A DNA stretch of 64,000 bases from Hyphochytrium catenoides (GCA_900088475.1 FLMG01000368.1:124001-188000); one strand, 5' to 3'. Shown: positions 3,001 through 38,801, counted from the stretch's first letter. Program-made: numbers and translations. Notes: generated by a model not told the origin, from the letters alone.

Positions 3001-3137
3001 TTTGATCATAGATAGGACAGCCAAAGGACAGGGCGAGTGCGAGGTCAATGAAATGAGAGCGACGCTCACTATTTGGACAGGTTGTCTGACAGCCAATGCA
3101 GGCAAGCAATCCAATAAAGTGATATTTTGATATTTTC

Positions 3138-3694
3138 CTACAAGCAAACAGTCACGCTTTCTCGTGCTTGGGTACGACAGACGTGTATACTCGTTGTCTG
3201 TAGCTTTCCGTCACCTTCTGCAGTTATGGCAGACCTACAGAGAAAGCCAGAAAGCTCTGACAAGTTAAGATGTAGGTATGGGTCGTCTTTCTGACTCTTC
3301 AGACCCACCTTACGACTTGACGACGTCTGGGTGACCCTTGAGGCTCTGTCCAAGAGCCGCAGCCCAACAGCGATACGCCAGAGTGCCTTTTCTTTGAAAG
3401 CTTGTCATGTCTGATCTGGTTGTCTGGTCCATTTCTGCCTCGTCTCACTCTTTTTTTATCATCACTATCTGCACTATGCTGTCCCTTCTTGGCTACTTGT
3501 AGGTCATAGATTTGTTTGCGCTTGTTTCTGGTTGGAGCTATTGAAGCACCTGTAGCAGATTCAGCTATTATGTCAGTTGGCATCGCTATGTGCGCTTGTG
3601 AAGCTCCTCTTACTACTGGTTCCGTCAGCGAGGCCTGTGATCCGCTGGCATTAAGGATAGAATTGAGCACTTCGGGTGATATGTCAGCTATCAA
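3138..3694 (-). CDS. Possible hypothetical protein, K/R-rich, probably spliced
   Basis: 131-aa ORF without an ATG. A plausible GT..AG intron at about 3236-3308 links it to ORF 3138-3353. No recognisable domain. Confidence 0.2.
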
Positions 3695-3942
3695 AAGTTT
3701 GTCTATTTATCCATATAGCTTGCGGTCACCATCATATAGCAAGCAAAGACTATTCCTCAGTTTATTGCCCTATCTGTACCCTAAATATATCCCTAGATGT
3801 AAGGTTGATTGTCTCTAGAAAGACAACCGCGACGTAGTGCGTGGCTTCCTCTAACACGGATGATCGCGGCATTATAGCCTCGTACATCCTGCTACACATA
3901 GCGCAATGCCGCACTAAACTTCTTGTCCACAGAGTAATAGCC

Positions 3943-18900: not shown

Positions 18901-20175
18901 AGCGGAGGTAAAGCACTCAAGCAAGTATTTTGAAATAGTACCTCCGTGGGAATCCACCGGCGCCTGCGTAGAAGTCGCCATCAGACGGTCAGAAATTCAA
19001 GAGGGAACCAGAACACGCACCTGCCAAGACACCACAAGCGACCGTGATGGATCGTCCATAGAAGCCACATCTTCCGGGCCTGATGTTCGCAGGACGACGC
19101 CCCCAACGTCGATTGCATCTGGCGCAGCTATCGGAGCAGAGCCAAAAGGTGTGGCGACGGTGAAGTTGCTCAACCCCATTATATTTTTTGCAGCTACACG
19201 TACGTAAAGTTGCACCCCCGCTATTAGTGAAGCGATTTTATAGTTGTAGAGCGCCTCGGCGAACGCGAACTGGGCACGTTCGCGCTCCACTTGCTTCAGA
19301 TGTAATGATTCAAAAGAAGGCGAGATATCCCATTGAACAACATAGGATGTCACTGCAGCTCCATTATCGCTGTCAGGGCTCTTCCAGTAGACTTTTAGGC
19401 TTGAGTCACTATCTCCCACAGACCTTACGAAAGTCTCCAGCGGAGCCGTTGGCGATGCCATTGGTTTCAATGACCGAGATTGAGACGGGAATCCTAAGCC
19501 AGCTGAATTTTCAGCAGTCACTCTGACGGAGTAGCCTTGACCCTGTCCCCGCTCCAATGGTGGGATAGTGTCCGTCGGACGTGAATTTAGTCCATCAATG
19601 ATGAATTCATAAGGTCCAAGATCCTTTGGGACGAACAAGACTGAATGTGCCGTACTTGTTGCTCCAGCAACCGAATCACTGGACGTGCAAGGTAAGTAAA
19701 CCCTGCTGATGGTGATGGCTCCTGCACAAAGAGCGATTTCTGGGACCACACTGCCACTGCTGCTAAGAGCAGCCCCATCAACTGCTAAAGATACCTGTCC
19801 AAAGTAAGAAGTGAAAGTGATACTATAATCATAGCTCTCAGTCGCGGAGAGGCTGTTGTCCACATACGATATGCGGACAGGTCCCACACCTGGTAAAGCT
19901 TCTACTGCTTTTTGAAGTTCCTGAGGGGCAACATTGAAGGAGAGAGGCCCTGTGGTAACTGCACCACCCAATGCTAGGGTGAAGAAACCCTGATTGACCG
20001 TGCGATGGATTCGAAGAAGCTGTACGTCCTCGATATGATCTCCAGTCTCCCACCATTCAACTCGATAAGTAAGGCTGTCATCACCCCCATCATACAGGGG
20101 CTTTTCCCATTCCACCATAAGCGAGGATGATCCAGCTATCCGCAGAGCTGTAAGTATGGGCGGTCCCGGGAGGAC
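3943..20175 (-). other. C-terminal block of about 17 FN3 domains with inserted modules
   Basis: Repeated FN3 halves, e.g. LMVEWEKPLYDGG, LKVYWKSPDSDNG, LKVVWSYPMSDGG, LVTWEVPLFDGG, LLVQWGTPLDIGG and ILVQWELPAFTGG, each completed by a GL..G..Y.VRV.A.N motif. Confidence 0.8.
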
Positions 20176-23100
20176 GGGCATAGCTATGACCGAAAACGGT
20201 GAGCCTTGAATGGGTTCACGACCATGAAACAATCTTCGACTTGGTATAATCTCCTTTGGTTGAGATAAGCTAGACCAAGATAGGCGGATCTGCGCCGAAC
20301 CAACGTTCTTTTTGAACTTGATGCTGATGGCGTAGAGGCGATCAGCAACTAGTGCTGCTGGAGTTGAATAGCTCAATTCTTGAGGAAAAGGGGCATTTAC
20401 GGTCTGAAAGATCAAGAACGTCTATCAGAATATTAAATCAGTAGAAGCACTTATTTTCAGGTAAACTCACCTCATTTGACAAATCGTTTAGCACCACTTC
20501 CCCATCGAAGCTCAATTGCACTCCATCATTGTATATCAAATAAAAGGTATAGACTTCCTCGTATGCAGGTTGAACAAAGCCCTGCCAATGGGCACTAATG
20601 TAGTCTTTTCCAGTTTCGGTAATGAGGCCTTCCCAGAAAAAGTCCACAGCCCCATCTACGCGCTGTAAAGCGGGTTGCCCATACAGCCATCGATTGTTAT
20701 AGTACTCTGCTTCTAGGCCAAACGGAAAGGTCCTGAAGACCTCCAGCCTGTACTCCCCATGTTCAGGCAAGATGTATTCACCACGGTATTGCGGTCCTGC
20801 GAAGTGCCTCACATCTACGGCAACCTCTTGAGGACCATGCAACCTGCCAACAAATTGATCACCCATGGTTCCAGATTTGCTGCTGACTGCTAAGGCACCA
20901 TCATAACCACTAGAGGTCGGGCAATAACTGCTTGTGTAGATGGTTGCACCGTCACCTAGCAGCCTATACGCTTCACTTGTGAGCAGGGATATTGGAGAAT
21001 GCTGCTCATCGGCTACCGAAAGCAACGTTATTATAAAGTCCACGCCGTTTAGCGCATTAGCTTCGCGTTCCACCTTCACGCTGTGAAAGGCAGGATTTTC
21101 TAGCAGTGCCCTTTCGATTACCTCTGTTGAACTTGTTGGCTGCAGATCTGAAGTCCTGAAATCATGATAGGCCAAAGTAAAATACCCACCCAGGCTTCCA
21201 GAGCTGAGAGCGGTCAATCGCACTCTCTGCCTCTTGTTGACATCACAGGCACTAATATGAGCTTCTGTACCCCCCAGAGAACTACTGGTCAGCTGGCTGC
21301 TGTCCACTTTTATCGGCGGTACGTCACCGAGTGCCGGTTCAAATGAGATAACGTACTGATAGCCTACGTTTGTTCCTCTATATAGATTAACGTGTTGTGT
21401 TGGGCCCTCGTAGACCGCAGATAGAGTTATTTGTGCCGGTGTTACGGACTTAACTCCAAAGATGGGACCGGTTTCGGATCCAAGTCGTATCCATGACCCA
21501 GATGTAAAGGCAGCAGCCACTGCTGAGTTGTCAAGGAAGAGTATGTCAGAGGTCTCTGTGGCTAGCGCTCCTCCAGCGGCAACAAGAGTTCTGCATGAGG
21601 TGGACTGAACGGTGACTGCCCCAAAGACGCCGGCCCTTCTGAGCTCGTTCTGAAGCGTCTCCGGGTCGATAGCGGCCCTAACAGGTAGAGAGTAATTTCC
21701 CAGGCCTATAGTCCACTTTCCCTGTAGTGCACCTCCATCAACTGCTCTTACTTCAATAACTTGGGTGTCCGGAACGGCTCCCACTGTTATACCTCCAGTA
21801 CCATCTACAAGATTTCCCTGTTTGTCTCGTGCCTCCACCAGGAACTCGGTGATGCTGTCAACCTTACTTTCATGCAAGCCTAAAGGACAATACAGAGGCG
21901 AAGTATGTTTAGAGTACTCTATTCATAGTGAAATGTAGGTGAAGGCAGGAGGAGAATGTGCCTACCGTAGAGTCCGACTTGGTTTTCAGATCCGGGCCAG
22001 GATGCTGTCGGTGAGTCTATGGCAGTACATGCTCCCGGGTCCGTTTCTCCATGAGCGATGTGTGGCTCGAATGGGCTTCGTCCCGTAACGATCTCTACAA
22101 TCGAGGCAGAGATTGCCGGCGTAGGCGTTCCTAGTACAATTTCCAGCAGTGGCAAGTCCCCAAGAAGGTAGGGAGAGTTGACTACTTGACCTTCAATATA
22201 TCTAGCGGAGAGCCAATGCGCGCTTTGTGGATAGCCAACTAGTGTAGGCAGGAATGTGACAGTCCAGGCCCATTTATCGACAGCGATGACTTCCTTAGTT
22301 ACTTTGGCATATTGGAGAGTAGAGATGGCTACTAATCTCTCCTGTAGCTCAGCTGCTGAAGCTTGATAAGGTACCTCTTCCGAAAGTTGGTCCCTAAAAC
22401 GCAGCCTGAAAGTATCGGACGATCGCGCTCCTAGGTCAGTAAGGACAATCCTCTGTTGCTCATGCACTATGATCTCAGGATTCTGGCCCGATGTAGAGGT
22501 CTTGATATGCTCCATCTCGCCCTCTTGCACTGGGACCACAGAGATGGTAGCACCTGGTCCTATGAGCTTGTTACGCACACGGAGAGTTGGAGCGTTGCCG
22601 ACGTACTTGATAAAGTGCAATAAGTGATGAATCCTATTGGTCTTCCTATTTGTCGTTACCTTCACCAAACCAAGGGTTGAGAAGCGAGCCAAGGCCTTTT
22701 CAAGCTGATCAGATTGCGCATTCCAGACTAACGACTCGGTCCACTGATTATTGTGTCCAAGCTGGTAGGTTCCGCCTGCCTCTTCCACATTGGAAAAGGA
22801 GAGTATCACTTCTTGAATGTCAGGTTTGGTTGCCATCATAACAGCCAATGTGTGGGGCCCAGAATGAAGTGGAACGTAAGATACCTCGTATACACCCCCC
22901 GACACCTCCTGTACTTTGCCCACAATAACTTCATCTTTGAAGGACTGGAAACGAGACGGAATAAGATTTACACGAAATCTAGCGTTGTGGCCAGCTTCTA
23001 TGTCATTCCCATGTGTATCCTTTATCTGAATCCAGAACTTTGACTCAACGCCGGATATTCCTACGAAACACATACCAACTTGGTAAGCACCTCTCAAGAG

Positions 23101-26100
23101 CCAACAAAGTCGGCAAGGTCCTACCTGAATACAAGCCGTCACCATAGGCTGTTGTTCTTTTAGCGTCAGGGGGCCCTGGAAGAACCACCAGAGTCCTGGG
23201 AAAGCCAGAGATTGGGCGAGCCATGTTCCCTTTCTGAATAGTACGCACAGTAATCGAAGTATCTCCTTTGATCAGCACTTGAGGTAGAACTGTCCCTAGT
23301 GCCTTCACCCGCGGAGACGTCTCTTCTTGCAGAAATGTCACAGTCCAAATGCAGCCTTTTGAAGGATCATCGCCTACACAAGATACTGTCGTGCTGTACC
23401 CCTGAATAGACTCGAATACTATCGTTGACAATGCAGCTTGAAGGTCAGCGGCATTGCTATCAAAGCTCATGCTAATTGTCGACCTCTTCGTCACCCATTG
23501 GTTCTTCTCAAATGCCGTTAGTGAGAGATACACGTCATGGAAATTCAAAGGCATCGTGCCAGTCGATCGGACTATCATGATCGTGGGCACAGCGGGGACC
23601 GAGACATCAAGTCTATACCTTCCCTTCACCTTCGGTACATAGCTCACTAGATGCGTCCCCGTAAACTGCGATGCACGGTATACTGGCACTCCCTTCTTAT
23701 CCGGAAGTAGCAGCCTTTCTACAATTGGCACTTGCGACCCATTAAGAGTGCCACTATAGGGGTTGACTGTAAAAAGTAGCCCTTCTACAATTAAGGTGTC
23801 TCCTCTTCGTATGTGAGAAGAGAAATCTGTCGCGGTCAGGAGCGTCGTACTACCCGTCCGAACTGTAGCGAGTCCAAGGTAGTCCCACCCGTTTTGAACT
23901 ACCGTGGAGACAGCGAAACTCCCAACCCCAAAATCGCATGGTGATAAGGAAGTCACCAGCATTTCCATCCTATTGGTGACAGAGCTCCAGGGACTAGTCG
24001 ACTCCGCTCTAAAGATGCAGTCTTCATAAGCATCCCCCCCATGGGCGCCAATAACCGCGAGAGTGGTCCCATTTGTCACCTGGTCGTTCAGGTCAGCGGA
24101 CAGCTTGAGAACGCCACCAGCAGAAAGCTCCACTGCGCAACTGGGACATAAGAGAGAAGGCGCAAAGGCAATGGGAGTGGGCACCGGTGGAGCATTGTCT
24201 CCCACCCTGCCAGACCCTGCCCAGCCGTCAACGCCTACATGACATAGAGAGCAAGTATCAGTGACCTCAGACGAAAGCGGTCCTGCATAAGACAAATCTG
24301 GGTTGCTTACCAGTGAAACGCACAATGTATTTTCCGCGTCCATTATTTAGAAGAGTATTATTTTCTGAATCCTTCGCTGTGATGGTGAATGTCTGGAGTT
24401 CCAAGGCTTGTACTTCAGGAGCAAGTCCAATACCGTTGGCAACGGTTAAGTTAGGACTAATCTCTCCGGGCAGGATATCCACAGAGAAAGGCGTCTTGGA
24501 GATGGGCCTCGAATATAGCAGGTTATCGGAAGGTATAACCTCACGTCTATTTTGTAGAGTACTGCTCCAAAGCAAACGAATTTTGGCCGGTTCGTCTGTA
24601 ACTCGATATTCCAAAACTATTGGCACAATGCTAGCTGAGAGGGTCATTGTGCCGTTGTGCAAGGTTGAGACTAGCCTCGAGTCATGGAATTGGTCGATAA
24701 CCACCTGACCGTTAATGTACAAGCGAACGCCTGACAGAGTTTCCACATAGAAGGTATATGAATCATTTCTCTCTACGAAGAGGTGACCTATCCACCGTAT
24801 TGAATAGTCCTTGGCTGGAAAGCCATCTTTAGGTGACCACTCATCCCAATTATAGTCAATGATGGGGCTAAGCCACGTGGCCTCGCATGGAGCGGCAACT
24901 TCTGAAAGCACCTCTTCGTCTAAGGGACAGAAAGGAGGACGCCCAGGGATAGGATTGGTGAGGTCATCGTTCATGAAGAACGTCGCGGTTAGTCCTCCCG
25001 CCTGCCGAAGCGCAACGTGGAGATTGTAATTGCCTGCAGACTTAGGCAAAAAGGATGCTTCGTAAACGCCTTTTCGATCTCCAAAAGAGGGTTCAACTGT
25101 ACCAAAGAGAGTGACTCCGGACGTGTCACCTAGTTGGGACCGTCCAGTTCCTATTAGCGTCACATTAAAAGAAGCTTCAGATCCGAGGTTGATATTGGTT
25201 GGGTTGCCGTAACGATCTGCAGCATATATTTTGAAGCGCTCAGCAACCCCTACCATTGCATGACTGCTGGCGGTATGAGACGTCCGTGGTCCATGCGCCT
25301 GTCCCCCAATAACCCGAACTGGAACTTGGAGATCAGACCCAATAACCTCACCTCTAATCAGAATTTGAGCTTGATATTCCGCTTGACTGATGGGGGTGTA
25401 TTGAGCTTCATAGAGGCCATTGCCCAAATGGGATATCCGATCCAGGCCCTTTACTTCGTATCGAACGTCCACACTTGAGATACCATTAGAGAAGTCTGAA
25501 GCTTCTAGAAGTGGAAGGCTCCTCACTGTTGAGCCCGTATGATTGACTAGAAAGCTGGTGGAAGAAGGAGAGCAGAGACTGCCAGAAGGTCCCGTCACAC
25601 TGACGGGTAATCCTAGTATATCCCTGAGTATAGTCTGTAGGGATTCTGTTGAAACGTCGCCGGATACTCTACTTGATCTTTCTCCAGTCCTGAGGGTGAA
25701 TCTTCCCTTCGCTAAACCAGTACACGAGACTCGTTGTTCTTCCCGCATACCTAGTCTCACCAAAGATTGCGAGCTTGATTTTCCCTTTTGTAGTTCGGTG
25801 ACTATAACGCGGTTTCTGCTGGACACGCCCACACTAAGTAAGGGTTGGTCCTTCAGCTCCTCGAACGTTAGTAACAACATATCTGGCAAAGACGGTACAC
25901 AAATGGTGTTCTGGCCACCCGGTGACACTAAAGATACAGGGAATCCCATAGCACCGGTCAGGAGGGCCTCGGCTTCAGAGAGGGTCGACGTTGGCTTAAG
26001 CGTTATGTCGGCAGATGTCCCTAAGGAGATTGGGATCGTTGAGGACGCATCGCAAGGATTTGTAAGACATCTACAGTTCAGTCCCTGAACCTCATACTCT

Positions 26101-29100
26101 CCGACATGGTAGCTAGTTCCTGACAATGCGATTGTGAGGTCAGAGAGAGCCCCAAGCTCTACCTTGTTGCCATGAGTACCCTTTACTATTTCAAAAACCA
26201 TCATTTGTGGGGCTCGTTGGCTGGCTTCGGATGACTGCAGCCCGCTCACATCAACCGCCAAGAGTTCAAGATCACCACCCATGGTGGGGTGGTCGAAAAG
26301 AATTGAGAAAATGTAGGTCATCACGGGAAAGTCGTACTGGCCGTGTGTGCTATTGTCTAATCCGATGACGTCTCTGGTCACTTCTACGGAAGGGATACTT
26401 GGTAGTTGGCTCATATAATTGCTGACTTCGATGGCGTCGCTATCAAATGGGATTGGCGAAGTCCAGAAGCCATTATAGCCAATGAGAAATGTACCCCAGA
26501 ATGGAGCTATACCTTTTACAGTAGACTCTGCATGATGCGCAAAGGTCAGGCTGGATAGAGGGCTAGTACTGCTGAAGCTTAACTCTGGCAACGGCCCTGT
26601 ATGAGCATTGAAGGTAACGAAAATCGAGGGGGGCGTGGGAGAGGAGCTGCATATACTAGCAGCTCCCGGCGGGTCAGAGCTTACGCTGACGTCGCCAACA
26701 CTCTCACTGGCGGATAATGCAGCCTCAAATTCAGCAAGAGTCGCCTGACTACTTATGGGAGATAATGTTGATGAGCCTCTGAAGAGAACGTTGAACTGTT
26801 CGGTTCCTAGAGAAGTGGAGTCGAGACATGTGAACACCTGTACTTCTTTCCGAAATGAGGTTTGGCCCCTAACCTCTTCGCTGATCACCACCTGTTTGGT
26901 ATCACGGACAGAATCCTTAGGCCATGGGAGAGGTTACTATCTACGAACATGAAGGTGAGTCTTACCCCTCCGGTTCCTGCCATGAGAGGCAAGTCTCCTT
27001 CCTCAACTATGAAGCTTACTAAGTAACTCTTGCCGGCGGCGAGAACGGTAGTTCCATCAACTGAGCTGACGGTAACTCCACTTGGAGAAATGGTAGGAAG
27101 ACCGGTCAAGGCCGCCACCAGGCTAGTTAAGGGGTCATTTACAGGGATCGCAGCTGTCTGGAAGCCTCGAAACGAAAGGGTAAAAGCAGAGGTGAGCGAC
27201 GGAGGAATGAAGACCCTCTGGACTTCTGGAATAGTTGGAACTATTCGGGCTTGGCTAACGATAGCCTGCTGTTCAAATCTGGGAGAAGAGAGAACTTTAG
27301 TATTCTCTTCGAGCCAGCAAGACTTGGTACTAACTCACCGTCTGGGGTCTCGAGTTTGAACATGGAGTATGGAAGGCTGTCCTGCGGTGCCATTAACGAG
27401 ACCTATTCCGAAAGCTGTGGAAGATGACGGATCAACAGCACCTTCTATCACAGAAACTACAAAAGGGCTGCCTTTGATTGGAACACCATCAGAAGTGATA
27501 TTCAACTTGTAGACTCCAGATTTCCAGGCTACGTAAGAGACAGGATAATCTCCCCCAGCTGCGAGAGTAGTGACAGTGATTCGATCGGTGCTAGATGAAG
27601 TAGCTGCATTTTCGACCGCCAACCGTGCCTGCCTCCATTTCTGGAATCCCCCTAAGAAGGTCACGTGATACTCATGTCGCCCGCCTCCGGCTTTTGTGTC
27701 TCGCACCTCGATTCCATACCGATAGTTATACATCATCTCCAGAGCCATTTGCAATCCTACGGGGCTGATGGACGAAGGAAGCTCTTGGGTAAAGACGCCT
27801 GGGCCTGAGGAGGACATAAAGGCCGGGTAGAAGGTAGCCGGTAATGTAGTGCAGCCATGTCCCAAGTTGACCGGTATCGTAGTAGCGGTCATAAGTCCTG
27901 CACCGACAGTCAACACACATTGATTCACCGCCAGTTTGCTTCCAGCACTGAGATAGGGAGAAATATCCTCGACAGTAGAGATTTCTGTGGCCGATATGGC
28001 GGTCACACAGCTGTCGCATAATTTCCTATCTAGGCTGCCCCAAGTAAGACGGAAGTACTTGTTCGCGCTGGGATCTGGGATATTAACGATCTGTGTAACG
28101 GATGAAGTCACTTCTTGGTAACCATCAGGTCCACTTAGAACCACCAAGAACGTGTCATCATCACCTGCTCCATAACCTTTGAAGTGAGCCGTCGAAGCAC
28201 CCGTCCTAGGATTTCCCATCTCATCTCGGGCGTGAAGGAGAAAGGAAGTGTGAACGCCCGATATTGCATATGATAGTGCCTTGGAGTCTGCATCGCTTGC
28301 CAAAGTCGAAGGAGGATGAAGATGACCATGTACCACTGTCAATAAGGGCAGGTTATCTAGCGATAGGCAATTTGAGGTATCTCCATCAAGGCAATGCAGA
28401 ATAGGGAGCCCTTCAAGAGTGGTTTTGACTCTGTATAAACCGGCGACCAGAGCTGTGTATGTGAGGCTGTAAGTGCCATTGTAATGGTCAACCACCCTAC
28501 CCGTATAAACGATGTCCGTATCCTGTCCGTCACTCTGAAGAATCAATTGCATCAAGAATTTGTCCCCTCCTGTTACCACCTTATTTCCAAAAGCATCCTT
28601 TGCCTGGATGTGCATATGACCGACCTCACCAGCGACGGCCTCCAACAGGTAATCCATGCCAGTAGAAGACCAGCTAACCACTGTAGACGTATGCCTAGCC
28701 GCCTCGCCAGGTGAAACCTGCAACGAAAAGGGGCTGCACTTTCTCGCAGCTCCTAATCCACAATAGATGGGTGTTCCTATGTACCCTCTCTCTCCGGTCT
28801 GGCCCATGTTGATGTGCACCGAGTAGTTGCCTGCTTCTGTCACCATGTATTGGACCTCGTACAAGCCTAAGCCAATATAAGAGGCATCTAGTTGAACAAT
28901 CCTCCTCTGATGGCTGGCATCCATGATGTTAATCTGCATTATCGTATGAAGAAGTTAGCAAGCGAAGGAAGGGCATTGACACAAGACAAAGGAGAAGGTA
29001 GTGACACACAACAGAATGATGATGAAAAGAGAAGATCGCTTCGTGTAGAGACGAGTGCGATCACAAGATCCAAGTAGTAGCTTACGGAGAAGGTGTCTCC

Positions 29101-32100
29101 ACCGGTCATCTTCGTGTTGTTGTTCTGATCTTTTGCCTGGATGTAGAAGGAGGCCGTTACTCCAGCCGTTGCACTTCTTAGGCCTTGACCAAAGGCTGTG
29201 GTGTAAGGGTAGTCTGCGGCACCAGGCACCACTTGTATAGTGAACGGGCTTCCCACAACGTGATCAGCATAAAGGAGGTTAGAAGAAGGGATAATTGTTC
29301 TCGACAGGCTATGGCTGCTCCATTCGAGCCGCACAGCGGATGGGCCTTTCTCAGCAACATAGTCAAGTCTAAAATGGTGGTAACGCCCTTTCGTAAGCAC
29401 CACTCGAGCGTGCTGGATGACGCCAGAGCTTTGACTATCAGCATCTATAATCACTTGATGATCAACCCACACCTTTATAGTATCTCTTGCATACACGAAA
29501 ATACTATGTAGCTCCGAAGCACGTCCCAGCAGCTTTCCTTGCCATCTCACGCTTGTATAGTCAGAAAAGGTAGGAGAGATTAAGCCTTCAGACCAGGTGA
29601 AAGCAATCTCTCTATCAATGCGCTCTAGAGCTGGTTGACCTGAACGAGCGCGGAAGAAAATCAGACATGACCTACTACTTGTCCGCCAGAAGCTTGGCCG
29701 GTTCGTCAGGAGCTACACAAACCTTGGAACCAAGGATTGTCAAAATATTCTGCTCTAAGTCCACCCCTTCGTAGCTGCTGGATCGCCAGAGAGTAGTTTC
29801 CGACGGCGCCAGGAATGTAATTTGCTTGATAGGTTGGTAGGCCGGAGATTTTCTTTCTCACCTAAGGAGAGGGAAGCAGATACACTGCTGTGAATCCTCT
29901 TACCCAAACAGAAACCGAAGCTGTAATTATGGATAAGGCTCGAACCTGCAACGTGGGGGAGCTTCCAGAAAGAGATTTCCGAGAACCCTGCTGCAGTTTG
30001 CGAATGCGAACTAACGGGTTAGACCCGACCAAGGCAGAGGCGTCTGACCCCATCAGACTGAGATCTCCCACTTCGGATTTGAAGGTTACGGTCCACTGGT
30101 ACTCCTGCCCAGGGCTTATTGGGCCCGAACGATTGACCTCAACCTCGCCAACAGAATATAAAGCCTCTAATGCAGACGTCATCTCTTTAGCGGAGGCATC
30201 ATGCGGTAGTGGGCTTGTACTCGCTCCTCCAAAGTCAAGAGTGAAAAATCCTTTCAAAGGAGTCGGTGAACCTCCCAAAGTCTCAATTAGCTGGATATCG
30301 TAGCGATAGGGGTGAGCTCCCAGCAATGGCAGAGAACCTAGCGTGCTCAGAAAGGTAATCGTCCACCTATGCCCTGTGTCTAGGACCTCACGGGTGACAT
30401 CGAGCTGACCCACATCAGTCAAACTTTATTTAGTACAGTGAGCGGGGAGAAGAGATCAGATTAAGGTTGTCTTCACCTGGCCTTTTAAACCGGCTTACCT
30501 CTCAAGGGCTGTCTTTAGCCCAGCTGCGGAAATGTCGAAAGGAAGATTCCCCGTATTCGCAGATCCGAAGGACACTACGAATGACCCTTGTATTGGAGAA
30601 TAACCCTTGTGATATAGTGCCTTAGTAACCTTCAATCCATTTCTAGCTAGCAGAGATTGCATGCCTACCTTCACTGCCTCGTCGACGGTCACGCGGCCAC
30701 CAATGCCAGTGAGGAAGTTTGTTGCTCTTACTTCGAGCAGAGGAACATCACCTACGGGATCCCTGAAGGTAACACTCCAGGACCCTGCGTTGTCTGCACC
30801 TTGGACAGAATTCCTCACCGTTACAGAACCGATATTGGGGAGAGTCTCTAACTTGGCTTTGACATTGCTTGGGGTGTCCAAGACATCTAGAGTCACAACG
30901 ATCCCAGCACCAGCCAGTGTAATGTCGAAGGATCCGGTCAGAGTTCCCGAGTCTACCGCCCTGGTAATAACCTGCACCTCAGCAGTGAAAGGCTGTTGGG
31001 CATACGTTTGGAGGGTTTGGACTTCCGTCACTCCTGTCTGCTGCTTGATAAAACTTTGGCTTGGAATAGAGGAGTCGACATTTCTCAAGGAAAGGAGGGG
31101 CAGATCCCCATACCGTTCTAAGAACGTTACTTGGTACACTGACCTTATCGCATCTACAGACCTGCTTACCAATACCCTTCCGATGTTATCTACTGTCTCC
31201 AGCACCGTCTGCACAGCAAGAGCTGCCGAATGATCTGATAGAAGTTCTAGCTGAGCTGCATCTAGAAGACCTGTTGCACTGTTAACAGCTCCTGAGATCC
31301 AAGACGTAGTGTCCCAATTGAAACTAAATCGGCCAGTGCTCCCAATCGGCAAGGATATGGCCTGCACATCATAAACAAGACCATTATATGTAGCCACGCC
31401 GGCATCCATCGCCCAAGCATCAGAGAAATTGCTAAACATTCCAGTGGAAGTCCTCCAGAGCTCAGTAAAAAAGATATCCGTCCCCGCTGTCCCTGCGTGT
31501 TAGAAGTTTGTCCCAATTAGTTAGAGGCTTGTCCGCATCGACCGACGAGTACTTACCAGTTACAGAGTCGACATCAGTCACGACTCTTCCGTCTGCCTTC
31601 CTTGGCTCAATAATAATTTTGTTAACATCTCCTTTGATGTGCTCCGTAATCTTGACCATAGAGGGATCATCAGTACCAGTGAATCCCTCTGCTTGAAGCA
31701 GTGGTACGTCCCCCTTCCTTGAGAGAAACGTAATTAGCCATCTGATGGCTGTCCCTGGTATGAGACTATCATCGCGGGTGATATGCACACTGCCAATACC
31801 GGTGCCAGAAGCCATGAGGGCTTCCTCAAGTTGGGCGGTCGAGAAGGTAGATTGCACTCGGGCAGGACCATTATCAACCCCAGGGATCCTCAAGAAGAAT
31901 TCATTGCTAAGGGATGGTGAGATAGTCACGAGCTGCACCTCATTGACCACTCCAGCTATTCCTTCTACCAATGCGCTGCCACGCACTGTTGTTTTGTCGG
32001 CACTAGCCCCAGATCTGGTGTCAATGACTGCTGATGGAGGGGATACGGAGGAGCCGACCGCATTCAAGGCAACAAGCTTAAAAGCGTACAACGCGCCTTG

Positions 32101-35100
32101 CCGGAGTCTATTCACAGCAAACTCAGTGACCTGGGGCTGGTCTCTGCCATCAAAGACCAATTCCGCCACAGTCCCGCGTTGGATGGAGGTAATCCCTATC
32201 TGAGCTCCGGTACCAGCAAGCCTTCCGCTAGTGACGGACATCAGCGGCAAGTCGCCAATATCCGTAAGAAATGTGATATCCCACGACCGCTGACCGTAGG
32301 AGTAAACCTCTTCAGCCACGGAAAGCCGGCCTATAGACGGCAGGTTCTCTAGCATTCGCTTTAAAGTGTTTGCGCCTACGTCAAACGGGATGGACGAAGT
32401 CTCATGACCTCGAAAGGAGACCGTAAAGTCGCCGCTTAACGGAACTATACCAAGCACCGGCGACGTCACAGACACCGCCGCCTTCTCGGTAGGGCTAAGG
32501 TCAGCCAGTAGGCTAGAGAGGACAACTATTTGGGGAATCCGACTATCAGCCGCATTGAAGGTGATGGTCCACATGTAGAGATTTGGTCCATTTGGTCCTG
32601 ATGTGACCGTAACATCAAGATAGTTAGTGAAGGCGTTCAACTCAACCGCCACCTCAGCAGCGGAGGCCGTCACTGGAAGAAGTCCTGTCTGCTCTTCGCC
32701 AATCCGCAGCCTAAAGCTCCCTGTAGCCTTCTCAATGCGAACTATCTGGACTTCCTCAACAGGCGAGTCCACCATTGTTGTTATGCGTTGGACACTCTGC
32801 TTTACTGGGGTGGGATCCGCCAGAGTCGGGAATGATATTCCACCAAACATCCACAGTTGGTACCCGGTGATCGGAGATCCGTTGCATGAGGCGGTGGGCC
32901 CTACACATGGGCTGTCCCAGGAAACTGTGATGGACGACTGCGACACATCCTTTGGCTCTGGAGCTGCTGGAGGATAGGGGTCGTCCGCCAGCAAAACTGT
33001 CAAAGGAGGACTCTGCGAAGATCTACCTTCCACATTTGAGGCTGCGACATGAAAAGTGTAGTAGCTTCCTGGACTGAGGGCCATATTGCTTGATACGCCT
33101 ACACCCCCAACAGCAGCAGAAGTAAAACGCCAGGATCTAAGGTCCGCAGGTATGCTGGATACCACTTGCAGCACTGCTCCTGTTGCATCTTCACACACCA
33201 ACTCAAAACTGTTTATAACGGCTCCCCCATTGTCTGCTGGAGCCTCCCAAGTTACAACGATATCGAGCAGAGATAGACCTGATATGACACGGGTAGTCGA
33301 ATCCCGTTTTGGTCTAGGCGGAGCAGCAGGAGGTCCAGGTGCTCGAGGGACGTAGGCTGCTTCCGGACTGAACGCCCCATGACAGAGTGCTGTTGGGTCT
33401 GCGGATTGGCAATAGCTAGTTGCACGAACCTGCCATTAAGGTAGGCAAAAATATCGTTTAGCGCTTGGCTTGCAAGTTCAGCACCAAAGCCCGGTCTCTC
33501 ACCTTAAATCTGTAGACTCGATTACTCTCGAGCCCTTCTACTAGTGCGGTAGCTCTGTAACTTAAGCTTGAAGGGTCTCCCGAGCCATCATATATAATAT
33601 TATAGTCTCCTCCTGCCCATCTTTCCATGAACACCTGGTAGCCACTGATAGAGCTGCCCCCATTTACAGTTGGCGGTTCCCATTGAATCTCAATAAACGT
33701 TGGACCAGACGTTTTGAGAATGGGCAACCTTAAAGGACCCGGAGGTTTGTTTGAAGGTATCACGGGGTCTGGCGACGCCAATCTTCTCCTTCCATAGTTG
33801 ACTGCATTGTGCGCAAAGGTCCGAACGTAAAGAGGTTTACCTGGGGTAAGTCCACTTATTGAGCTCTCAAAAGGAGGTCCATTTGACAAGTCAGTATGCA
33901 AGACCCTCAAAGGAACCGAACTTCCTTCAACTATTTTGGTAACATCAATGCCTGGGGTTGATCCAGACCAACCGCCTCGAAGGAGAAGGTTCATCGGCAC
34001 CAAGTCATTCAATGAGCCCTCGTTACATACGTCGGTCCCCAGCGGCGTCCTTCGGCAACCAAGGAACGTGACCCTCCAAGTAAAACCATTTGTTAAGACC
34101 AATCTCTCGACTTCCACTCCACCTATGTTATCCATTTCTAGCAAAGCATGTTCGAAGTCCTTTGCCGAGGCATCATGTTGTATGGTGGGGGAAAGAAATG
34201 TCCTTGCGCCATCATTGTATTGCAATTGAAAGGTTCCTCCCAGCGGATCTGATCCGACTACAATGACCCCCACAGTCGTATGGACTCCTGCTCCGGTCAA
34301 GCGGCTTTCATCGCAGATAAGTGTTGAGACTTGTCCTAACACATACGGTATGAACGGGGTTAGCAAAGTGAGATACTCTATGGCCTCAACTGGGCCGTAG
34401 CGGCCCGAAGTATCCGTTATCATACCTGAACCAGGCGGAAAGCTCCCTGGCTGAGAAACAAAGGTGATGGTCCACGAGAACTCTCCTCGCGGAGAAGGAG
34501 GACTGCGAGTTACTTCGACTGTCCCAACATTTGGTAGACGTTGCAGATATGCTTTAACCAGAGTGTCTTCCGCGTTGTAGGGTAGCCATTCAGTAGTATG
34601 GCCTGCCATTATCAGACGAAAGAACCCTCCTAGGTGATTGCCCCTTATGGAGGCTGCTGTTCCAACCGCTTCTCCATCGGTCTTCACGAAAACGTTTACT
34701 CCGTTGCCAGTCAGAAGGTTCCTTGAAGTCGGAGTTGTTATCGCCGCGAAAGCGCCAGCTTCGTTAAAGAGAACTTGCCAGAGCTAGGTCACCGTGCAGC
34801 ATTTCCATGAAGACACCAGTTGCGAGTGATGTGAGCTAAGATTATACATATGTCGATTACAGCGACTTACCCTTTGCCCGGAAGCTTGCTCAACGCTACC
34901 TAAATTGGTGCTGGTGAGCTCTGTGACTGTTACTCCTCCAGCAGCAGTAATTGTAGGTAGTGCGTTGATACCGGTCTGGAGAATTGATGTCGTGACATTT
35001 GAAGGGAAAAAGAGTCCTGTCATCGCGCCAAGAAAGCTCAGGCTGAAGCTGCCGCCAGGAGGAGCTTGACCCTTTAAGGTCTCTGTGATCTAGACCATAT

Positions 35101-38100
35101 TAAGGACACTGTAAGCTAAGGAAGTATTATTGAAGTGAGGTTTGCTTACATCTATCCTCCTATTTCCTTGCAAGTTGAAGACGTTGGCGGTCAGTAGTGG
35201 CATATCTCCAGCAATTCCGTCCACAGAGTTGAAGGTGACTTCAAAGCCCCCCACGCATCCCAAGGTAGAACAAGGGGAGCATGCCATTGTTGCGCCATTT
35301 ATGAACTGGATTGAAATGTCCCTCACTTTGGAGATGCTTTTGATCGCCTGGGCGATAACCGAAGTTTGACCCTCATCTGCTCTGATAGGCACAGAACTTT
35401 GTCCAGCAAAAGAAAGGGTGAACGTTCCGCCTGGAGTTCAGTAGCGCGTGTCGTCAATGGAAAAATGGGTCATCTCTGACCAGTGGTGACAATAACAAAC
35501 CTGTGGCGTCGCATTGAACTAGTTGAATTTCGGAAGTAGTTGGTGGCCCTGTGTAGCTTGACGAGATATGGAGTAGCTGGGTTTCTTGTGGTGAGGTACC
35601 CGCAAAAGTAGAGATCGTCTGGACGGCTGACCGCACAGGAGCGGTTAAAGTAACCGCCTGAATCTCGTCATTAAAGCTACAGTTGCAACAGCAAAGCAGA
35701 GATATAGCGGAGTGTATAAATAGAAAGGCAACACAAACTTCGCTATAAGAGCGCGGTACCTTGTTTGGCTGTATTCTATGGTGTAGGCATCGACGTTGCT
35801 CCCACCCGAATTAACTGGAGCATCTAGAAGAACTTTTACAGTGGTACCATCCTCTACGCTGAGTCGAACTTTTTCAACTACCCCTGGCGGAACTTAAGGA
35901 GAGACAACGGGCAGAATTAGAGATTAATTGCAGGCAACAAGGGCAGTCCGTTACTAGATACTTACGCCTCGATGGGGCAAGTGAGGGCGGTTTGCTGTAA
36001 GCTGGAGCACCAACTCCGAGCAGGTTTATGGCAGAGATACGGAAGAAGTAGGCGATTCCTTCACTGAGCCCACTAACAGTCATGGAAAGGTCGCTCAGGT
36101 CTGTTATCAGTGTGGTTCCTTCTGGTAGACCGAGTTCCCGATCTCTGGTGTTGAATGCCGGCATTACCCCCTTTACAGCTTCTGTGACACTTATCATTGG
36201 TGATGTCCCACTCATTGTTAGGAAGTCTGCTTCTATTAAGGGAAGGTCACCTAGAGCGGTGAGAAATGTTATAGTCCAGGAGTAGCCGTTGTTGAAGTCG
36301 GGCCCTGAGCGGACAATATTTACCGTTCCCGAGGTACCCAGTCGTTCTAGAGAGTTGCGTAGGTCTTCGGCAGCTATATTGTACGGCAAGTATTCCGTCC
36401 GTTGCCCTTGGTAAAACAGTGCAAACGACCCGCTAAGTGGTTGGGAGGTGCTTAGTTGCAGGACTGATGCAGTCACCGTATCTCCTGTGCCTAGGTCAGT
36501 CGAAGATACGCCAAAAGTGGCAGTACCTCCAGCGGCAACCTCTATGGCAGGAACAGAACCTGCATTAGTGTCAAAAGTGATGAACCAAGTGCAGGATGCA
36601 TCAGGCGAAGCATCGGAAGCGGTCACAGTTACTTGACGAATGTCCGCCAATGATTCCAATTCATACTTGATTTGATTGATGTTCCCATTTTGAATTGTGG
36701 ACATGGCAATGGTATCATCACCGACCGTCACAGAGGTGGAGGGTGTTACACCTCCGCCAAAGACTATCAGCTGTATCTGCGGCAGGTTTCCGTTGTTATT
36801 GTGGAAGGTGACTTGCCATGTGCAGGCCTGAGTAGGAATAGAAGGGGAACTGGAGACGGTAATTGCTCCCGTGACGGTTGGGAGATTTTTTAACTCACTC
36901 GCAATCTGAGCTGCAGTTGCGGAGCAGTTCCCTCGAAGCGGGTTTGCCTTTATGTCACCGGTCGTTCTCGTTTGGCCCTTTATATTGACCACCATGGCAA
37001 AGGTCAGGGACGACGACACCACATTATCTCCACCGAACAAAGTAGTGTCGACAGTTGAGGTCTGAATTTGCTGGATCTCTGGCCGCGATGGATTACAACT
37101 ACCATCCTCAGGATTTGCTAAGATGATTCCTGTCTCTTGATTGTTGAAGCGAAGCCTGAACGTCGTGCTAGAGTGAACCTGTGCCATTGAAGGGGCTGTT
37201 GTGATGGATTGTACTGCCTTTCGCGTGCCTTGGAATATCTCCTTGATAAAAACTGCCGCTGAGCTGGGGCCAAGGTTTTTCGACTCAGTGAGCGTCACCG
37301 AATCCACTAAAAGTTCAGGGATGTTCCCTTCTCTTTCAAGGAAAGAAATGGTCCATGTATAGCCTCTTTGTAGGTCTGGCCCAGTGCGTGCAACTTTGAT
37401 GTTACCGAGGGTGCTAATAACTTCCAGCGCTGTGGCGAAGGTTCGCTCATCGGCATCGAACGCGATCGGAGAGGACAGGCTGCCCTCCAAGCTGAGTGTA
37501 AATGTTCCACCGTTCAGTTCGTTACCTCTAACAACTGTTCCAACAGCTACTGTGGCCCCAACACCGGTCAAGGAGGCAGTGTTAGGGACCAACTCAGGCA
37601 AATCTCCTGCGTTTTGGTTCGAGGTGAAGGTGACCAACCATTCGTAACATCCTTGGTCATCAGGTCCACTGCGCAGGACGGTCACAGTGCCCACAGTAGC
37701 AAGCCCCTGTAGGTACAAATAACGATTAAAACGACAGCAAGCCAACGTAGGGATGAGTCAATTTTGTGTATTGACAGTATCCTCACCTCCAAAGCCCTTC
37801 TCATGTCATCCTCACTGGCGTCGTAGGAGATGCTTTCGGTATCTGCTCCGCTGAAGGAGAGAGTAAAGTATCCACCTAGTCTGTTACCTGGTTGAGGTAC
37901 CCCTATCTCCACCGTTGCCCCCACTCCGGTTAGAGATGAGCTACCCAGTTCAAGGGGTGGAACTAGCCCCAGGGCAGGTGAAAAGGTGATAGTGTAAGAT
38001 AGTCCGGTAGAGGGTGCCCCAGAGGCTGTGATGCCAACAATACCGGCCAAACCAATATTACTCATACTCTAGAGGAATATAGATAGATCAGTCTTTTAGG

Positions 38101-38801
38101 GACTCTGGGATGAACTACGAAAAGTTACCTGTAAAATAGACTGCAAGGTATTCCTGGCTGGCCCTGACGGATCAGCATTATATGCGATCTCGCCTGATAT
38201 TTGTCTAGAACCGCCTGACCGAGATGTATCCAAGATGAGGGCAAAAGACCCACCCAAGGCCTTTCCCTGGGCTACGCTAAGCCGTACCACCTGAACCGTC
38301 GACACTGGAGTTGCACTGCTTTTCACGCTTTGGACCGCAGGCACATAAACCGCGGATGTAGTCACGCTCTGCACCTCATTGGGCCCAAGATGAACTGAGG
38401 TCGAGATCACTTGAACTTCTTGTACTCCCGGATCCGTGTCCCACTCCACCTGTACAGTAATGGGAGCCGCAAGGCTTTGAGGGATGGGGATGGTAACGGT
38501 ATAAGTAGATTACGCACTTTGTATGCCTTGATAGGCGATCCTCCATCGTGGACAGGTGGATTGAACGTAACTCTGAGGCTGTTGTCATCAACGACACTGA
38601 GAGATGGCTGACTGGGAGCTGCTGGAACTGTTGAGGAAAGCGAGAATATGAGTATAAAATGCAGACGACTTCACTGTCAGCTGCATTGGACACCTTTGGC
38701 TTCCTACCTGTGAGTTGACCAGTTGCCTCTCCTACAAGGTACCCCAGGATGCAGGAAAGGACAGAGACGGCTGCCGCCGCTCTGCGGCTCTTTCCATTCA
38801 T
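3943..38801 (-). CDS. Giant (~10,000 aa) secreted multi-domain protein with FN3, filamin-Ig, PA14 and novel repeat modules ('titin-like'); about 59 exons
   Basis: Dozens of minus-strand ORF fragments join in frame across short introns, e.g. 38628-38707, 38450-38517, 38069-38128, 34336-34425, 24235-24310, 8287-8360 and 6001-6072. The protein starts MNGKSRRAAAAVSVLSCILGYLVGEATGQLT|VPAAPSQPSLSVVDDNSLRVTFNPPVHDGGSPIKAYK|VEWD and ends GLTPGREYYVRARAINNLGYGPLIMAH*. FN3 motifs (W..P..DGG..I..Y.VEW; GL..G..Y.VRV.A.N..G) recur throughout. Length is estimated as span minus about 58 introns of ~75 nt. Confidence 0.9.
8287..8360 (-). other. Non-canonical GC-AG intron in the giant gene
   Basis: On the minus strand it reads TTC AAG|GCAAGTGA...GCTGAGCAG|GTC CGA CAA. 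Removing these 74 nt joins YTYFK to VRQGQSF in frame. The donor matches the strong AG|GCAAGT consensus typical of GC donors. Confidence 0.65.
20225..20720 (-). other. PA14 domain 3
   Basis: GLEAEYYNN...RVDGAVDFFW...SAHWQGFV...YTFYLIYNDGVQLSFDG...IRLSWSS...IIPSRRL. Confidence 0.8.
24515..24998 (-). other. PA14 domain 2
   Basis: GGLTATFF...IDYNW...YSIRWIGHL...YTFYV...GVRLYINGQVVID...IRLLWSS...VIPSDNL. Confidence 0.8.
29265..29770 (-). other. PA14 domain 1
   Basis: GGLRAEYFDNPWFQ|GQPALERIDREIAFTW...SVRWQGKL...KVWVD..VIID...RLEWSS...IIPSSNL. Confidence 0.8.
32020..38627 (-). other. N-terminal block of 5 FN3 domains, three of them split by large inserts
   Basis: FN3 starts near 38627, 35890, 33750, 33350 and 32980. 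Their C-terminal halves read SGLSEGIAYFFRISAINLLG, SGLTPGKPLYVRTFAHN, EGLESNRVYRFK, LSPGSYYTFHVAASN and RLRQGALYAFKLVALN. Confidence 0.8.
38718..38801 (-). other. Predicted signal peptide of the giant protein
   Basis: Basic n-region (MNGKSRR), hydrophobic h-region (AAAAVSVLSCILGYLV) and a small-residue cleavage site (A-T-G|Q) immediately before the first FN3 domain. Confidence 0.65.

What the first reader, a model, noticed from the sequence alone, without database searches (positions are those of the whole stretch)
33860..38449. 'Balanced-bracket' nested domain code: stacked lead strands matched one-for-one by headless module bodies
The recurring ~90-aa module normally reads EVQ-strand + GGxFxLxF...DA...ALE.L..IG.V.V.R...W.VTF...GD.P.L. 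Inside FN3 #1, four lead strands come back to back (QEVQVI, NEVQSV, PAVQSV, STVQVV; ~38425-38280). They are followed by exactly four bodies without their own lead strand (GGSFAL, GGYFTL, GGTFTL, SGSFAL), with one self-contained nested pair before the last. FN3 #2 repeats this 4:4 pattern (DEIQAV, SAVQTI, QETQLL, SEIQLV, then GGTFTL, GGSFSL, GGFFRL, GGTFQL). FN3 #5 (~32790-32180) and the insert at ~31030-30330 show 2:2. Inference: the chain runs outward laying one strand per domain, then returns completing each. This would form a rigid strand-complemented stalk of defined length that branches from the backbone. I know of no description of this topology for these proteins.
Basis: partly seen in the sequence, partly recalled or inferred. 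Interest (0 to 1): 0.9.

Follow-up and report, generated by a model that had tools for sequence, protein, structure and literature searches.

The report
Self-nested domains forming double-threaded stalks
A giant secreted protein of an oomycete-like protist builds side stalks by inserting one ~100-residue domain inside the next, up to four deep here and 14 deep in relatives. The chain lays one strand per domain on the way out and completes each domain on the way back, a layout I could not find described for these proteins.

Summary
All of those tests are computational.

- **The pattern in the window.** The minus strand carries a gene of at least 35 kb with introns (38801 to at least 3946). Two split FN3 domains each enclose four stacked EVQ-type lead strands followed by four bodies that lack a lead of their own. 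Unit 1 also holds a nested pair, and two 2:2 units lie further on.
- **Conservation.** The four leads of unit 1 keep their number and position in about 45 homologues. Across 170 homologues, lead and body counts between FN3 halves track each other from 1 to 16 (r = 0.93-0.95), and every balanced stacked block is a proper bracket word.
- **Folding.** AlphaFold2 folds a complete orthologous unit at pLDDT 93.5 and pTM 0.73, with all four leads as strands. With only two bodies present, only the two innermost leads stay ordered. That fits nesting and contradicts both a separate lead sheet and a parallel pairing order.
- **Cysteine co-occurrence.** A cysteine in lead 1 of unit 2 occurs with an extra cysteine in body 4, about 500 residues away (9/9 against 0/9).
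- **Relatives.** The module is homologous to the CTE-like domain of mycobacteriophage Bxb1 (gp23, E = 4e-45). The gp23 half-modules are also in nested order. It is also related to Ochromonas mastigoneme proteins.

I could not read contacts directly because the tools give no model coordinates.

The parts
3946..38801 (-). Giant gene with introns: FN3 backbone with inserted CTE-like module stalks. The 3' end is not determined.
   Evidence: Lead, body and FN3-half hits lie continuously on the minus strand from 38625 to about 3958. Introns are GT-AG and 60-80 nt long.
38715..38801 (-). Start codon and a hydrophobic N-terminus that looks like a signal peptide
   Evidence: Translation. Orthologues P0003, P0004, P0006 and P0011 begin with signal-peptide-like segments. 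The signal-peptide reading is an inference.
38518..38625 (-). FN3 #1 N-terminal half (strands A-C). It continues after intron 38517-38450 as VEWDTDPG (38449-38426).
   Evidence: Pfam fn3 profile positions 2-35, E = 2.6e-4. fnN HMM E = 8e-15. Splice sites.
38276..38419 (-). Four stacked lead strands of unit 1 (QEVQVI, NEVQSV, PAVQSV, STVQVV), spaced 13-14 residues apart
   Evidence: Position-matrix scores 16.7, 21.6, 15.0 and 9.9. Aligned in about 45 homologues. All four are strands at pLDDT above 90 in the orthologue model.
37949..38254 (-). Body 1, which pairs with lead 4. It contains intron 38128-38069.
   Evidence: GGSFAL motif. Body HMM C-terminal part at 38047-37949. Intron.
37590..37876 (-). 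Body 2, inferred partner of lead 3. It contains intron 37786-37707.
   Evidence: Body HMM positions 1-30 and 29-67. Intron. Truncation model.
37230..37511 (-). Body 3, inferred partner of lead 2
   Evidence: Body HMM positions 1-69, E = 4e-22. It also matches phrog_10909 (major tail protein), E = 3.9e-4.
36480..37217 (-). Nested pair forming a side branch. Outer module: lead 37217 plus strands 2-3. A complete inner module follows (lead 37079, body 36926-36771). The rest of the outer module follows (36713-36537).
   Evidence: Hits. In the orthologue model, the outer module's first three strands come first, then the whole inner module including its helix, and then the outer module's helix and remaining strands.
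36160..36434 (-). Body 4, inferred partner of lead 1
   Evidence: Body HMM positions 1-68, E = 3e-23.
35970..36134 (-). FN3 #1 C-terminal half
   Evidence: fnC HMM E = 2e-19. Pfam fn3 profile positions 48-76. Titin FN3 matches cover chain positions about 41-95.
35768..35887 (-). FN3 #2 N-terminal half
   Evidence: fnN HMM E = 1.8e-10.
35508..35666 (-). Four stacked leads of unit 2 (DEIQAV, SAVQTI, degenerate QETQLL, SEIQLV with Cys)
   Evidence: Scores 19.4, 13.0, below 3 and 14.8. Homologues are also weak at the third lead.
34058..35431 (-). Four bodies of unit 2: 35431-35189, 35056-34907, 34630-34436 and 34240-34058
   Evidence: Body HMM hits.
33749..33880 (-). FN3 #2 C-terminal half
   Evidence: fnC HMM E = 5e-10. 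Pfam fn3 hit on ORF 33461-34687.
32233..32979 (-). FN3 #5 N-half followed by a 2:2 unit (leads 32796 and 32754; bodies 32721-32524 and 32436-32233)
30321..31025 (-). A 2:2 unit (leads 31025 and 30980; bodies 30935-30729 and 30587-30321, the second split by an intron)

Best explanation
The region encodes recursive self-insertion of one domain type.

**The module.** It is about 100-110 residues long. It has a lead strand (EVQxVxT), strands 2 and 3 (GGxFxLxF, TxxIxYDAS), one helix (xxVxxALExL), then VxVxR, WxVTF, GDxPxL and a closing strand.

**How nesting arises.** The loop between the lead and strand 2 can host a complete copy of the same module, and that copy can host another. A stack of n leads followed by n bodies is therefore n domains nested n deep. 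Lead n pairs with body 1 and lead 1 pairs with body n. The whole stack sits in the C-C' region of an FN3 domain, which is thereby split into two halves.

**Geometry (inferred).** Two chain segments join every pair of neighbouring domains, one on the outward pass and one on the return pass. The result is a stalk whose base holds both chain ends, whose tip is the innermost domain, and whose length is set by n. Extra modules can branch off the return pass, as the nested pair does.

**Function (inferred).** The protein is secreted and very large. It most likely serves as an extracellular structural or adhesive surface protein of the zoospore or cyst stage.

**Shown and inferred.**
- Shown: the sequence grammar and its conservation.
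- Predicted by modelling: the fold, and the dependence of leads on bodies.
- Inferred: the exact pairings of the middle leads, the stiffness, and the function.
For: 1. **Grammar in the window:** 4+2 leads to 4+2 bodies, then 4:4, 2:2 and 2:2.
2. **Conservation:** the four leads of unit 1 are aligned in about 45 homologues that are 36-61% identical.
3. **Homologues:** token strings include <LLLLBBBLLBBB> (8 times), <LLLLBBBB> (7 times), 6:6, 8:8 and 9:9, and a run of 14 stacked leads in P0023. r = 0.93-0.95, and 29 of 29 balanced stacked blocks are bracket words against 22% when shuffled.
4. **Full-unit model:** AlphaFold2 on P0038:18-845 gives pLDDT 93.5 and pTM 0.73. All four leads are DSSP strands. 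In the nested pair, the outer module's first three strands come first, then the whole inner module with its helix, and then the outer module's helix and remaining strands.
5. **Truncation model:** with leads 1-4 and bodies 1-2 only, leads 3 and 4 stay strands at pLDDT 96-97 while leads 1 and 2 become coil. pLDDT is 50 over lead 1, and 51 and 81 in the two blocks covering lead 2.
6. **Cysteines in unit 2:** the lead-1 cysteine co-occurs with an extra body-4 cysteine in 9 of 9 sequences and in 0 of 9 without it. Bodies 2 and 3 mostly have no cysteine.
7. **Sterics:** lead 4 runs straight into body 1 with a short spacer, so a parallel pairing order is not feasible (sequence).
8. **Phage relative:** the module profile matches Bxb1 gp23 at E = 4e-45. 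In gp23, three lead-plus-N-half segments (269-323, 330-386, 390-461) are followed by C-halves (506-568, 561-596), which is a nested order in a protein with a solved structure. Foldseek probability is 1.0.
9. **Function context:** signal-peptide-like N-termini. P0059 is Saprolegnia parasitica SPRG_03974, reported as secreted and induced in cysts (PMC5771568). The profile also matches Ochromonas mastigoneme protein OCM5.
Against: - No coordinates or PAE are available, so no lead-body contact was read directly.
- The models are of an orthologue, not of the window's own spliced protein.
- In the truncated construct, leads 1-2 also lack the FN3 half and sit at the N-terminus, which by itself lowers confidence.
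- A statistical coupling score trained on adjacent lead-body modules did not separate nested from parallel or random matching in pure stacks (33 of 62, p = 0.9).
- A general cysteine-parity test was uninformative.
- The cysteine co-occurrence is not corrected for shared ancestry.
- About 40% of blocks delimited by FN3 halves are not exactly balanced. Most are off by one, and I attribute this to weak leads and imperfect gene models.
Confidence: 0.8

Rival explanations
1. The stacked leads form a small sheet or linker domain of their own, and the 'headless' bodies fold completely without them.
For: Leads are 7-8 residue strands separated by 5-6 residue linkers, which is compatible with a beta-meander. 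Each body is preceded locally by the closing strand of the previous body.
Against: In the truncated model, leads 1 and 2 do not pair with leads 3 and 4, and they lose strand assignment. Lead numbers from 1 to 14 track body numbers. The lead-1 cysteine co-occurs with a body-4 cysteine.
Confidence: 0.04
2. The leads complement bodies of other molecules, as donor strands do in pili, so that the protein polymerises.
For: The module family occurs in filamentous assemblies: Ochromonas tubular mastigoneme proteins OCM5 and OCM6, and phage tail and capsid proteins. A strand that completes a fold from a distance could in principle act between chains.
Against: Lead and body counts balance within each chain, and within each FN3 insertion. 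The monomer model is confident with all leads ordered. FN3 closure needs both ends of the insert side by side.
Confidence: 0.06
3. The architecture is ordinary beads on a string, with the EVQ repeats acting as an extended and perhaps glycosylated spacer that has no fold role.
For: The leads are rich in Ser and Thr (TTSA, STS), as mucin-like spacers are.
Against: The EVQ strand is an integral first strand of every self-contained module and of the phage homologue. Leads have pLDDT above 90 and strand assignment only when the matching number of bodies is present. A bead chain could not bring the two FN3 halves together.
Confidence: 0.04

Closest known systems
CTE and CTE-like domains of mycobacteriophage Bxb1: gp23 tail tip cage (9d93 chain M), major capsid protein (9d9w) and tail tube gp19
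   Same: The module is the same, including the EVQ lead and the GGTFxL...YNAS...AL motifs. Profile E-values are 4e-45, 4.7e-6 and 1.2e-3. Foldseek probability is 1.0. The window's body 3 hits phrog_10909. The gp23 half-modules are also in nested order.
   Different: gp23 has three levels, split after the VxV strand rather than after the lead. The host is a phage virion protein, not an FN3 backbone. There are no stacks of bare leads. I inferred the nesting in gp23 from the order of the sequence matches and did not inspect the structure.
Ochromonas tubular mastigoneme proteins OCM5 and OCM6 (9ufe)
   Same: The profile matches a single module (OCM5 E = 6.3e-5; OCM6 E = 0.13) in an extracellular stramenopile filament.
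   Different: The match is weak and covers one module. There is no evidence of stacking or nesting. I found no paper on this entry.
Giant secreted FN3 proteins of Saprolegnia parasitica induced in cysts (SPRG_03974, SPRG_05384, SPRG_19863)
   Same: SPRG_03974 is P0059. It has the same modules and a seven-deep stack. It is described as secreted and most expressed in cysts (PMC5771568).
   Different: The paper annotates only FN3 domains. It does not mention the module or its nesting.
Classical domain insertion (discontinuous domains)
   Same: One domain is interrupted by another, whose N- and C-termini lie side by side.
   Different: Here the same domain type is inserted into itself repeatedly, 4 deep in the window and up to 14 deep in P0023. 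The comparison with typical insertion depth rests on my own knowledge. Searches found no description of this arrangement.
Donor-strand complementation in chaperone-usher pili (from my own knowledge)
   Same: A strand supplied from elsewhere completes an incomplete beta fold.
   Different: In pili the strand comes from another subunit and drives polymerisation. Here it appears to come from the same chain, hundreds of residues away.
Chlamydomonas FMG1B 'beta chunk repeats' (9gos)
   Same: It is a giant surface glycoprotein made of repeats of about 110 residues, each with beta sheets and one short helix.
   Different: The Foldseek match is weak (probability 0.21). The paper describes a simple chain of repeats with no nesting.

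Membership tests
Fibronectin type III (PF00041), split by an insertion | A sequence match to the N-terminal strands A-C before the insert | tested here: met
   window:38512-38670 matches fn3 profile positions 2-35, E = 2.6e-4, 21.6 bits. This is below the 25-bit cut-off because only half a domain is present.
Fibronectin type III (PF00041), split by an insertion | A sequence match to the C-terminal strands after the insert | tested here: met
   fn3 profile positions 48-76 in the 623-aa ORF and 50-78 in P0038:770-845. Titin FN3 matches cover chain positions about 41-95.
Fibronectin type III (PF00041), split by an insertion | The two halves assemble into one sandwich | tested here: inconclusive
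   Both halves are confident strands in the model, at pLDDT 93-95. Contacts could not be read.
Phage CTE-like domain (Bxb1 gp23, capsid and tail tube) | Significant profile similarity over the whole module, including the lead | tested here: met
   A4 profile against the PDB: gp23 E = 4e-45 over profile positions 2-76. Major capsid protein E = 4.7e-6, gp19 E = 1.2e-3.
Phage CTE-like domain (Bxb1 gp23, capsid and tail tube) | The same fold | tested here: met
   Foldseek probability 1.0 to 9d93_M, 9d93_J and 9d9w_A. RMSD is 3.4-4.0 A over 112 columns.
Phage CTE-like domain (Bxb1 gp23, capsid and tail tube) | Binding to cell-wall glycans, as reported for Bxb1 baseplate accessory proteins | not testable with these tools
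   This is only stated second-hand in PMC13252515.
Nested domain insertion | The domain is discontinuous in sequence, with a complete domain lying between its parts | tested here: met
   In the nested pair, the outer module's first three strands come first, then the whole inner module with its helix, and then the outer module's helix and remaining strands. Lead stacks are followed by equal numbers of bodies.
Nested domain insertion | The distant segment is needed for, and packs into, the interrupted domain | tested here: inconclusive
   The truncation model shows that the order of the leads depends on the bodies. The L1-B4 cysteine co-occurrence supports proximity. No contact map was available.
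Donor-strand complementation between subunits | The complementing strand comes from another polypeptide | not tested
   No multimer prediction was possible. Counts that balance within each chain argue against it.

The most novel reading that the evidence does not exclude
Domain architecture in this family follows a bracket (context-free) grammar rather than the usual tandem one. A single module nests inside itself, to a depth of 4 here and 14 in relatives, to build double-threaded stalks of programmed length on an FN3 backbone. The same module and nesting habit are shared with an actinophage tail protein.
Probability: 0.7. Interest if true: 0.85.

Novelty: new variant of a known kind. Interest (0 to 1): 0.8.

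Why it matters
- **A new architectural rule.** Multi-domain proteins are normally beads on a string. Here one chain builds rods in which two chain segments join every neighbouring pair of domains, and the rod length is set by the nesting depth. If confirmed, this would be the deepest self-nesting I know of.
- **A scaffold idea.** It suggests a natural design for stiff extracellular spacers of defined length.
- **A large unannotated family.** The profile search found 8292 representative proteins at E <= 1e-3, and Pfam has no model for the module. The family includes proteins induced in cysts of a fish-pathogenic oomycete. Tools that assume contiguous domains will misread it.
- **An evolutionary question.** The link to the mycobacteriophage CTE domain and to stramenopile flagellar hair proteins raises the question of how the module came to be shared.

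Tried and rejected
- **Pfam on the ORFs.** Only FN3 halves were found, and no family matched the module.
- **Reading contacts.** The tools return only pLDDT and DSSP, and /data holds no coordinates. I used a truncation design instead.
- **General cysteine-parity test** over all bracket-matched pairs. It was uninformative, with 21 leads carrying a cysteine and noisy segment ends. It also cannot separate nested from parallel order when both lead 1 and lead 4 carry a cysteine.
- **Coupling score.** Mutual information between lead and body positions in 690 non-redundant adjacent modules gave an antiparallel ladder between the lead and the WxVTF strand. Transferring those couplings to pure stacks did not favour nested over parallel or random matching (33 of 62, p = 0.9). 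The modest advantage seen probably reflects differences between module classes, so I do not count it as evidence.
- **FMG1B.** The fold match is weak, and the paper describes a simple repeat chain.
- **Literature.** Searches for a description of the nesting found nothing. The primary Bxb1 structure paper and any paper for 9ufe are not in the library.
- **3' end of the gene.** I could not define a membrane anchor or the 3' end.
- **Folding the window's own protein.** I did not hand in the window's own spliced protein, because the tools take only unaltered sequences.
Full report
**What is in the window.** The region belongs to one very large minus-strand gene with short GT-AG introns of 60-80 nt.
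- It starts at an ATG at 38801 with a hydrophobic, signal-peptide-like N-terminus.
- Module and FN3 hits continue down to about 3950. The 3' end is not defined.
- WxVTF motifs occur 19 times on the minus strand and never on the plus strand.
- Pfam recognises only halves of FN3 domains and has no model for the repeated ~100-residue module.

**The observation.**
- Unit 1, in order: FN3 N-half (38625-38518, fn3 profile positions 2-35); four leads 13-14 residues apart (38419-38276); three bodies; a nested pair; a fourth body; and the FN3 C-half (36134-35970, fn3 profile positions 48-76).
- Unit 2 has the same 4:4 layout between 35887 and 33749. Its third lead (QETQLL) is degenerate here, and in relatives too.
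- Two 2:2 units follow, at 32796-32233 and 31025-30321.
The nested pair is nested at a different loop: the outer module is interrupted after its third strand. The strand just before each 'headless' body is the closing strand of the previous module. SGKFSL at 34782 is a chance match.

**Relatives.**
- The 623-aa ORF finds oomycete proteins: Aphanomyces astaci at 46% identity and a partial Phytophthora kernoviae protein.
- A profile search finds 8292 representative proteins at E <= 1e-3, many of them 4000-7800 aa long.
- Named members include Thraustotheca clavata 'secreted protein' and Saprolegnia parasitica SPRG_03974. The latter is reported as secreted and most expressed in cysts (PMC5771568).
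- In about 45 orthologues of unit 1, 36-61% identical to the modelled one, the four leads are aligned column for column. Several orthologues start with a signal peptide directly before the FN3 half.

**The grammar.** I built a position matrix for leads (about 2% of hits expected from shuffled sequence) and HMMs for the body and for the two FN3 halves. I then wrote each of the 170 proteins as a string of tokens.
- Recurrent strings between FN3 halves are LB, LBLB, LLBB, LLLLBBBB (7 times) and LLLLBBBLLBBB (8 times), plus 6:6, 8:8 and 9:9 stacks.
- P0023 has 14 leads in a row, and its running count returns to about zero.
- Over 242-255 blocks, lead and body numbers correlate at r = 0.93-0.95. 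Counts are equal in 54-58% of blocks and off by one in 35-41%. I attribute the off-by-one cases to weak leads and imperfect gene models.
- All 29 balanced stacked blocks are proper bracket words, against 22% after shuffling.

**Modelling.** It is 37% identical over 612 aa and 58% over the lead region.
- *Full unit.* With a 68-sequence alignment, the complete unit (FN3 half, four leads, all bodies, FN3 half; 828 aa) folds at mean pLDDT 93.5 and pTM 0.73. All four leads are DSSP strands at pLDDT 91-96. DSSP assigns a strand only to hydrogen-bonded residues, so each lead has a partner.
- *Nested pair.* In that model the outer module's first three strands come first, then the whole inner module with its helix, and then the outer module's helix and remaining strands. 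That order is nesting.
Leads 3 and 4 stayed strands at pLDDT 96-97. Leads 1 and 2 became coil, with pLDDT 50 over lead 1 and 51 and 81 in the two 10-residue blocks covering lead 2.
- *What this means.* The number of ordered leads equals the number of bodies present, counted from the innermost lead outward. This contradicts a separate lead sheet. It also contradicts a parallel pairing order, which would have left leads 1-2 ordered.
- *Caveat.* In that construct, leads 1-2 also lack the FN3 half and sit at the chain end.

**Cysteine co-occurrence.** I compared 20 orthologues of unit 2.
- Lead 4 and body 1 each always carry one cysteine.
- Lead 1 carries a cysteine in 11 of the 20.
- Of the 18 sequences that cover both sites, an extra cysteine in body 4 (alignment columns 654-661) is present in 9 of the 9 with the lead-1 cysteine. 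It is present in 0 of the 9 without it.
- In most of the 9 carriers, bodies 2 and 3 have no cysteine at all.
- The window has neither cysteine.
- This points to a disulfide between lead 1 and body 4, about 500 residues apart. The count is not corrected for shared ancestry.

**Tests that gave nothing.** A general cysteine-parity test did not discriminate between pairing orders. Neither did a coupling score learned from adjacent modules and applied to pure stacks. The coupling analysis did suggest that the lead lies antiparallel to the WxVTF strand.

**What the module is.**
- A profile of 104 self-contained modules matches mycobacteriophage Bxb1 gp23 (tail tip cage, 9d93) at E = 4e-45. The match includes the leads EEVQQI, NEVQTV and NEVQVV.
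- The same profile matches the Bxb1 major capsid protein (4.7e-6) and tail tube gp19 (1.2e-3). Foldseek agrees, at probability 1.0.
- The window's own body 3 hits a phage major-tail-protein family.
- Another paper calls these 'CTE-like domains' (PMC13252515).
- In gp23, three lead-plus-N-half segments are followed by C-halves. This is again a nested order, split at a third loop position. I did not inspect that structure.
- The profile also matches Ochromonas tubular mastigoneme protein OCM5 (6.3e-5).

**Mechanism.** The best reading is recursive insertion of a module into the loop after its own first strand, with the whole stack inserted into an FN3 domain.
- Lead 4 runs directly into body 1, and the two FN3 halves must meet. 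The chain therefore has to go out and come back.
- Two chain segments then join each neighbouring pair of domains, which should stiffen the stalk. pTM 0.73 is consistent with that.
- The nesting depth sets the stalk length.
- A role as an extracellular structural or adhesive protein is inferred from the signal peptide, the cyst expression of a homologue and the contexts in which the module is found.

**Novelty.** Domain insertion and the CTE-like fold are both known. Repeated self-nesting to this depth, as the organising rule of a large protist protein family, is not described in anything I could search. I rate it a new variant of a known kind.

Noticed in passing
window 37230-37511 (-); profile A4: The eukaryotic module is homologous to the C-terminal extension (CTE) domain of mycobacteriophage Bxb1 capsid, tail tube and gp23, and it hits PHROG major-tail-protein family phrog_10909. 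A domain shared between actinophage virions and stramenopile surface proteins is unexpected, and I cannot explain its origin.
   Followed up: partly
PDB 9ufe chains EA, FA and BA against profiles A4 and A3: Ochromonas tubular mastigoneme proteins match one module (OCM5 E = 6.3e-5; OCM6 E = 0.13; 'tubular mastigoneme protein' E = 0.59). This hints that the module is a building block of stramenopile flagellar hairs.
   Followed up: partly
window 36480-37217 (-): The nested pair splits the outer module after strand 3, before the helix. Bxb1 gp23 splits after the VxV strand, and the lead stacks split after strand 1. The module therefore tolerates self-insertion at three or more loops.
   Followed up: partly
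window about 35590 (-), unit 2 lead 3: The third lead of unit 2 is degenerate (QETQLL). It is also weak in homologues (for example KAQLVH in P0026 and an unrecognisable one in P0039), so the E-V-Q signature is not strictly needed at every level.
   Followed up: no
protein P0023 (7591 aa, JGI metagenome): It has fourteen leads in a row. The running count of leads minus bodies returns to about zero some 50 tokens later, which implies a nesting depth of up to 14 with internal side branches.
   Followed up: partly
window 38069-38128, 37707-37786, 38450-38517 (-): Short GT-AG introns of 60, 80 and 68 nt interrupt modules. The first is in frame and contains a stop codon, so ORF-based callers split the gene. 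Many database homologues are truncated at the equivalent of the FNSKDPxNG site by read-through into an intron.
   Followed up: partly
window 62384-63442 (-), 50508-51212 (-), 58002-59669 (-): The neighbouring ORFs are ordinary eukaryotic genes: a mitochondrial carrier (Pfam E = 8e-63), an adenylate-kinase-like fragment and a weak cNMP-binding hit.
   Followed up: no
window 2400-3950 (-): I could not identify the 3' end of the giant gene or any membrane anchor. The last clear FN3 C-half is at 4047-3958.
   Followed up: partly
adjacent lead-body modules in 170 homologues: Mutual information between lead and body positions forms an antiparallel ladder. Lead positions 1, 3, 5 and 6 pair with body columns 54, 52, 51 and 49. 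This suggests the lead pairs with the WxVTF strand.
   Followed up: partly
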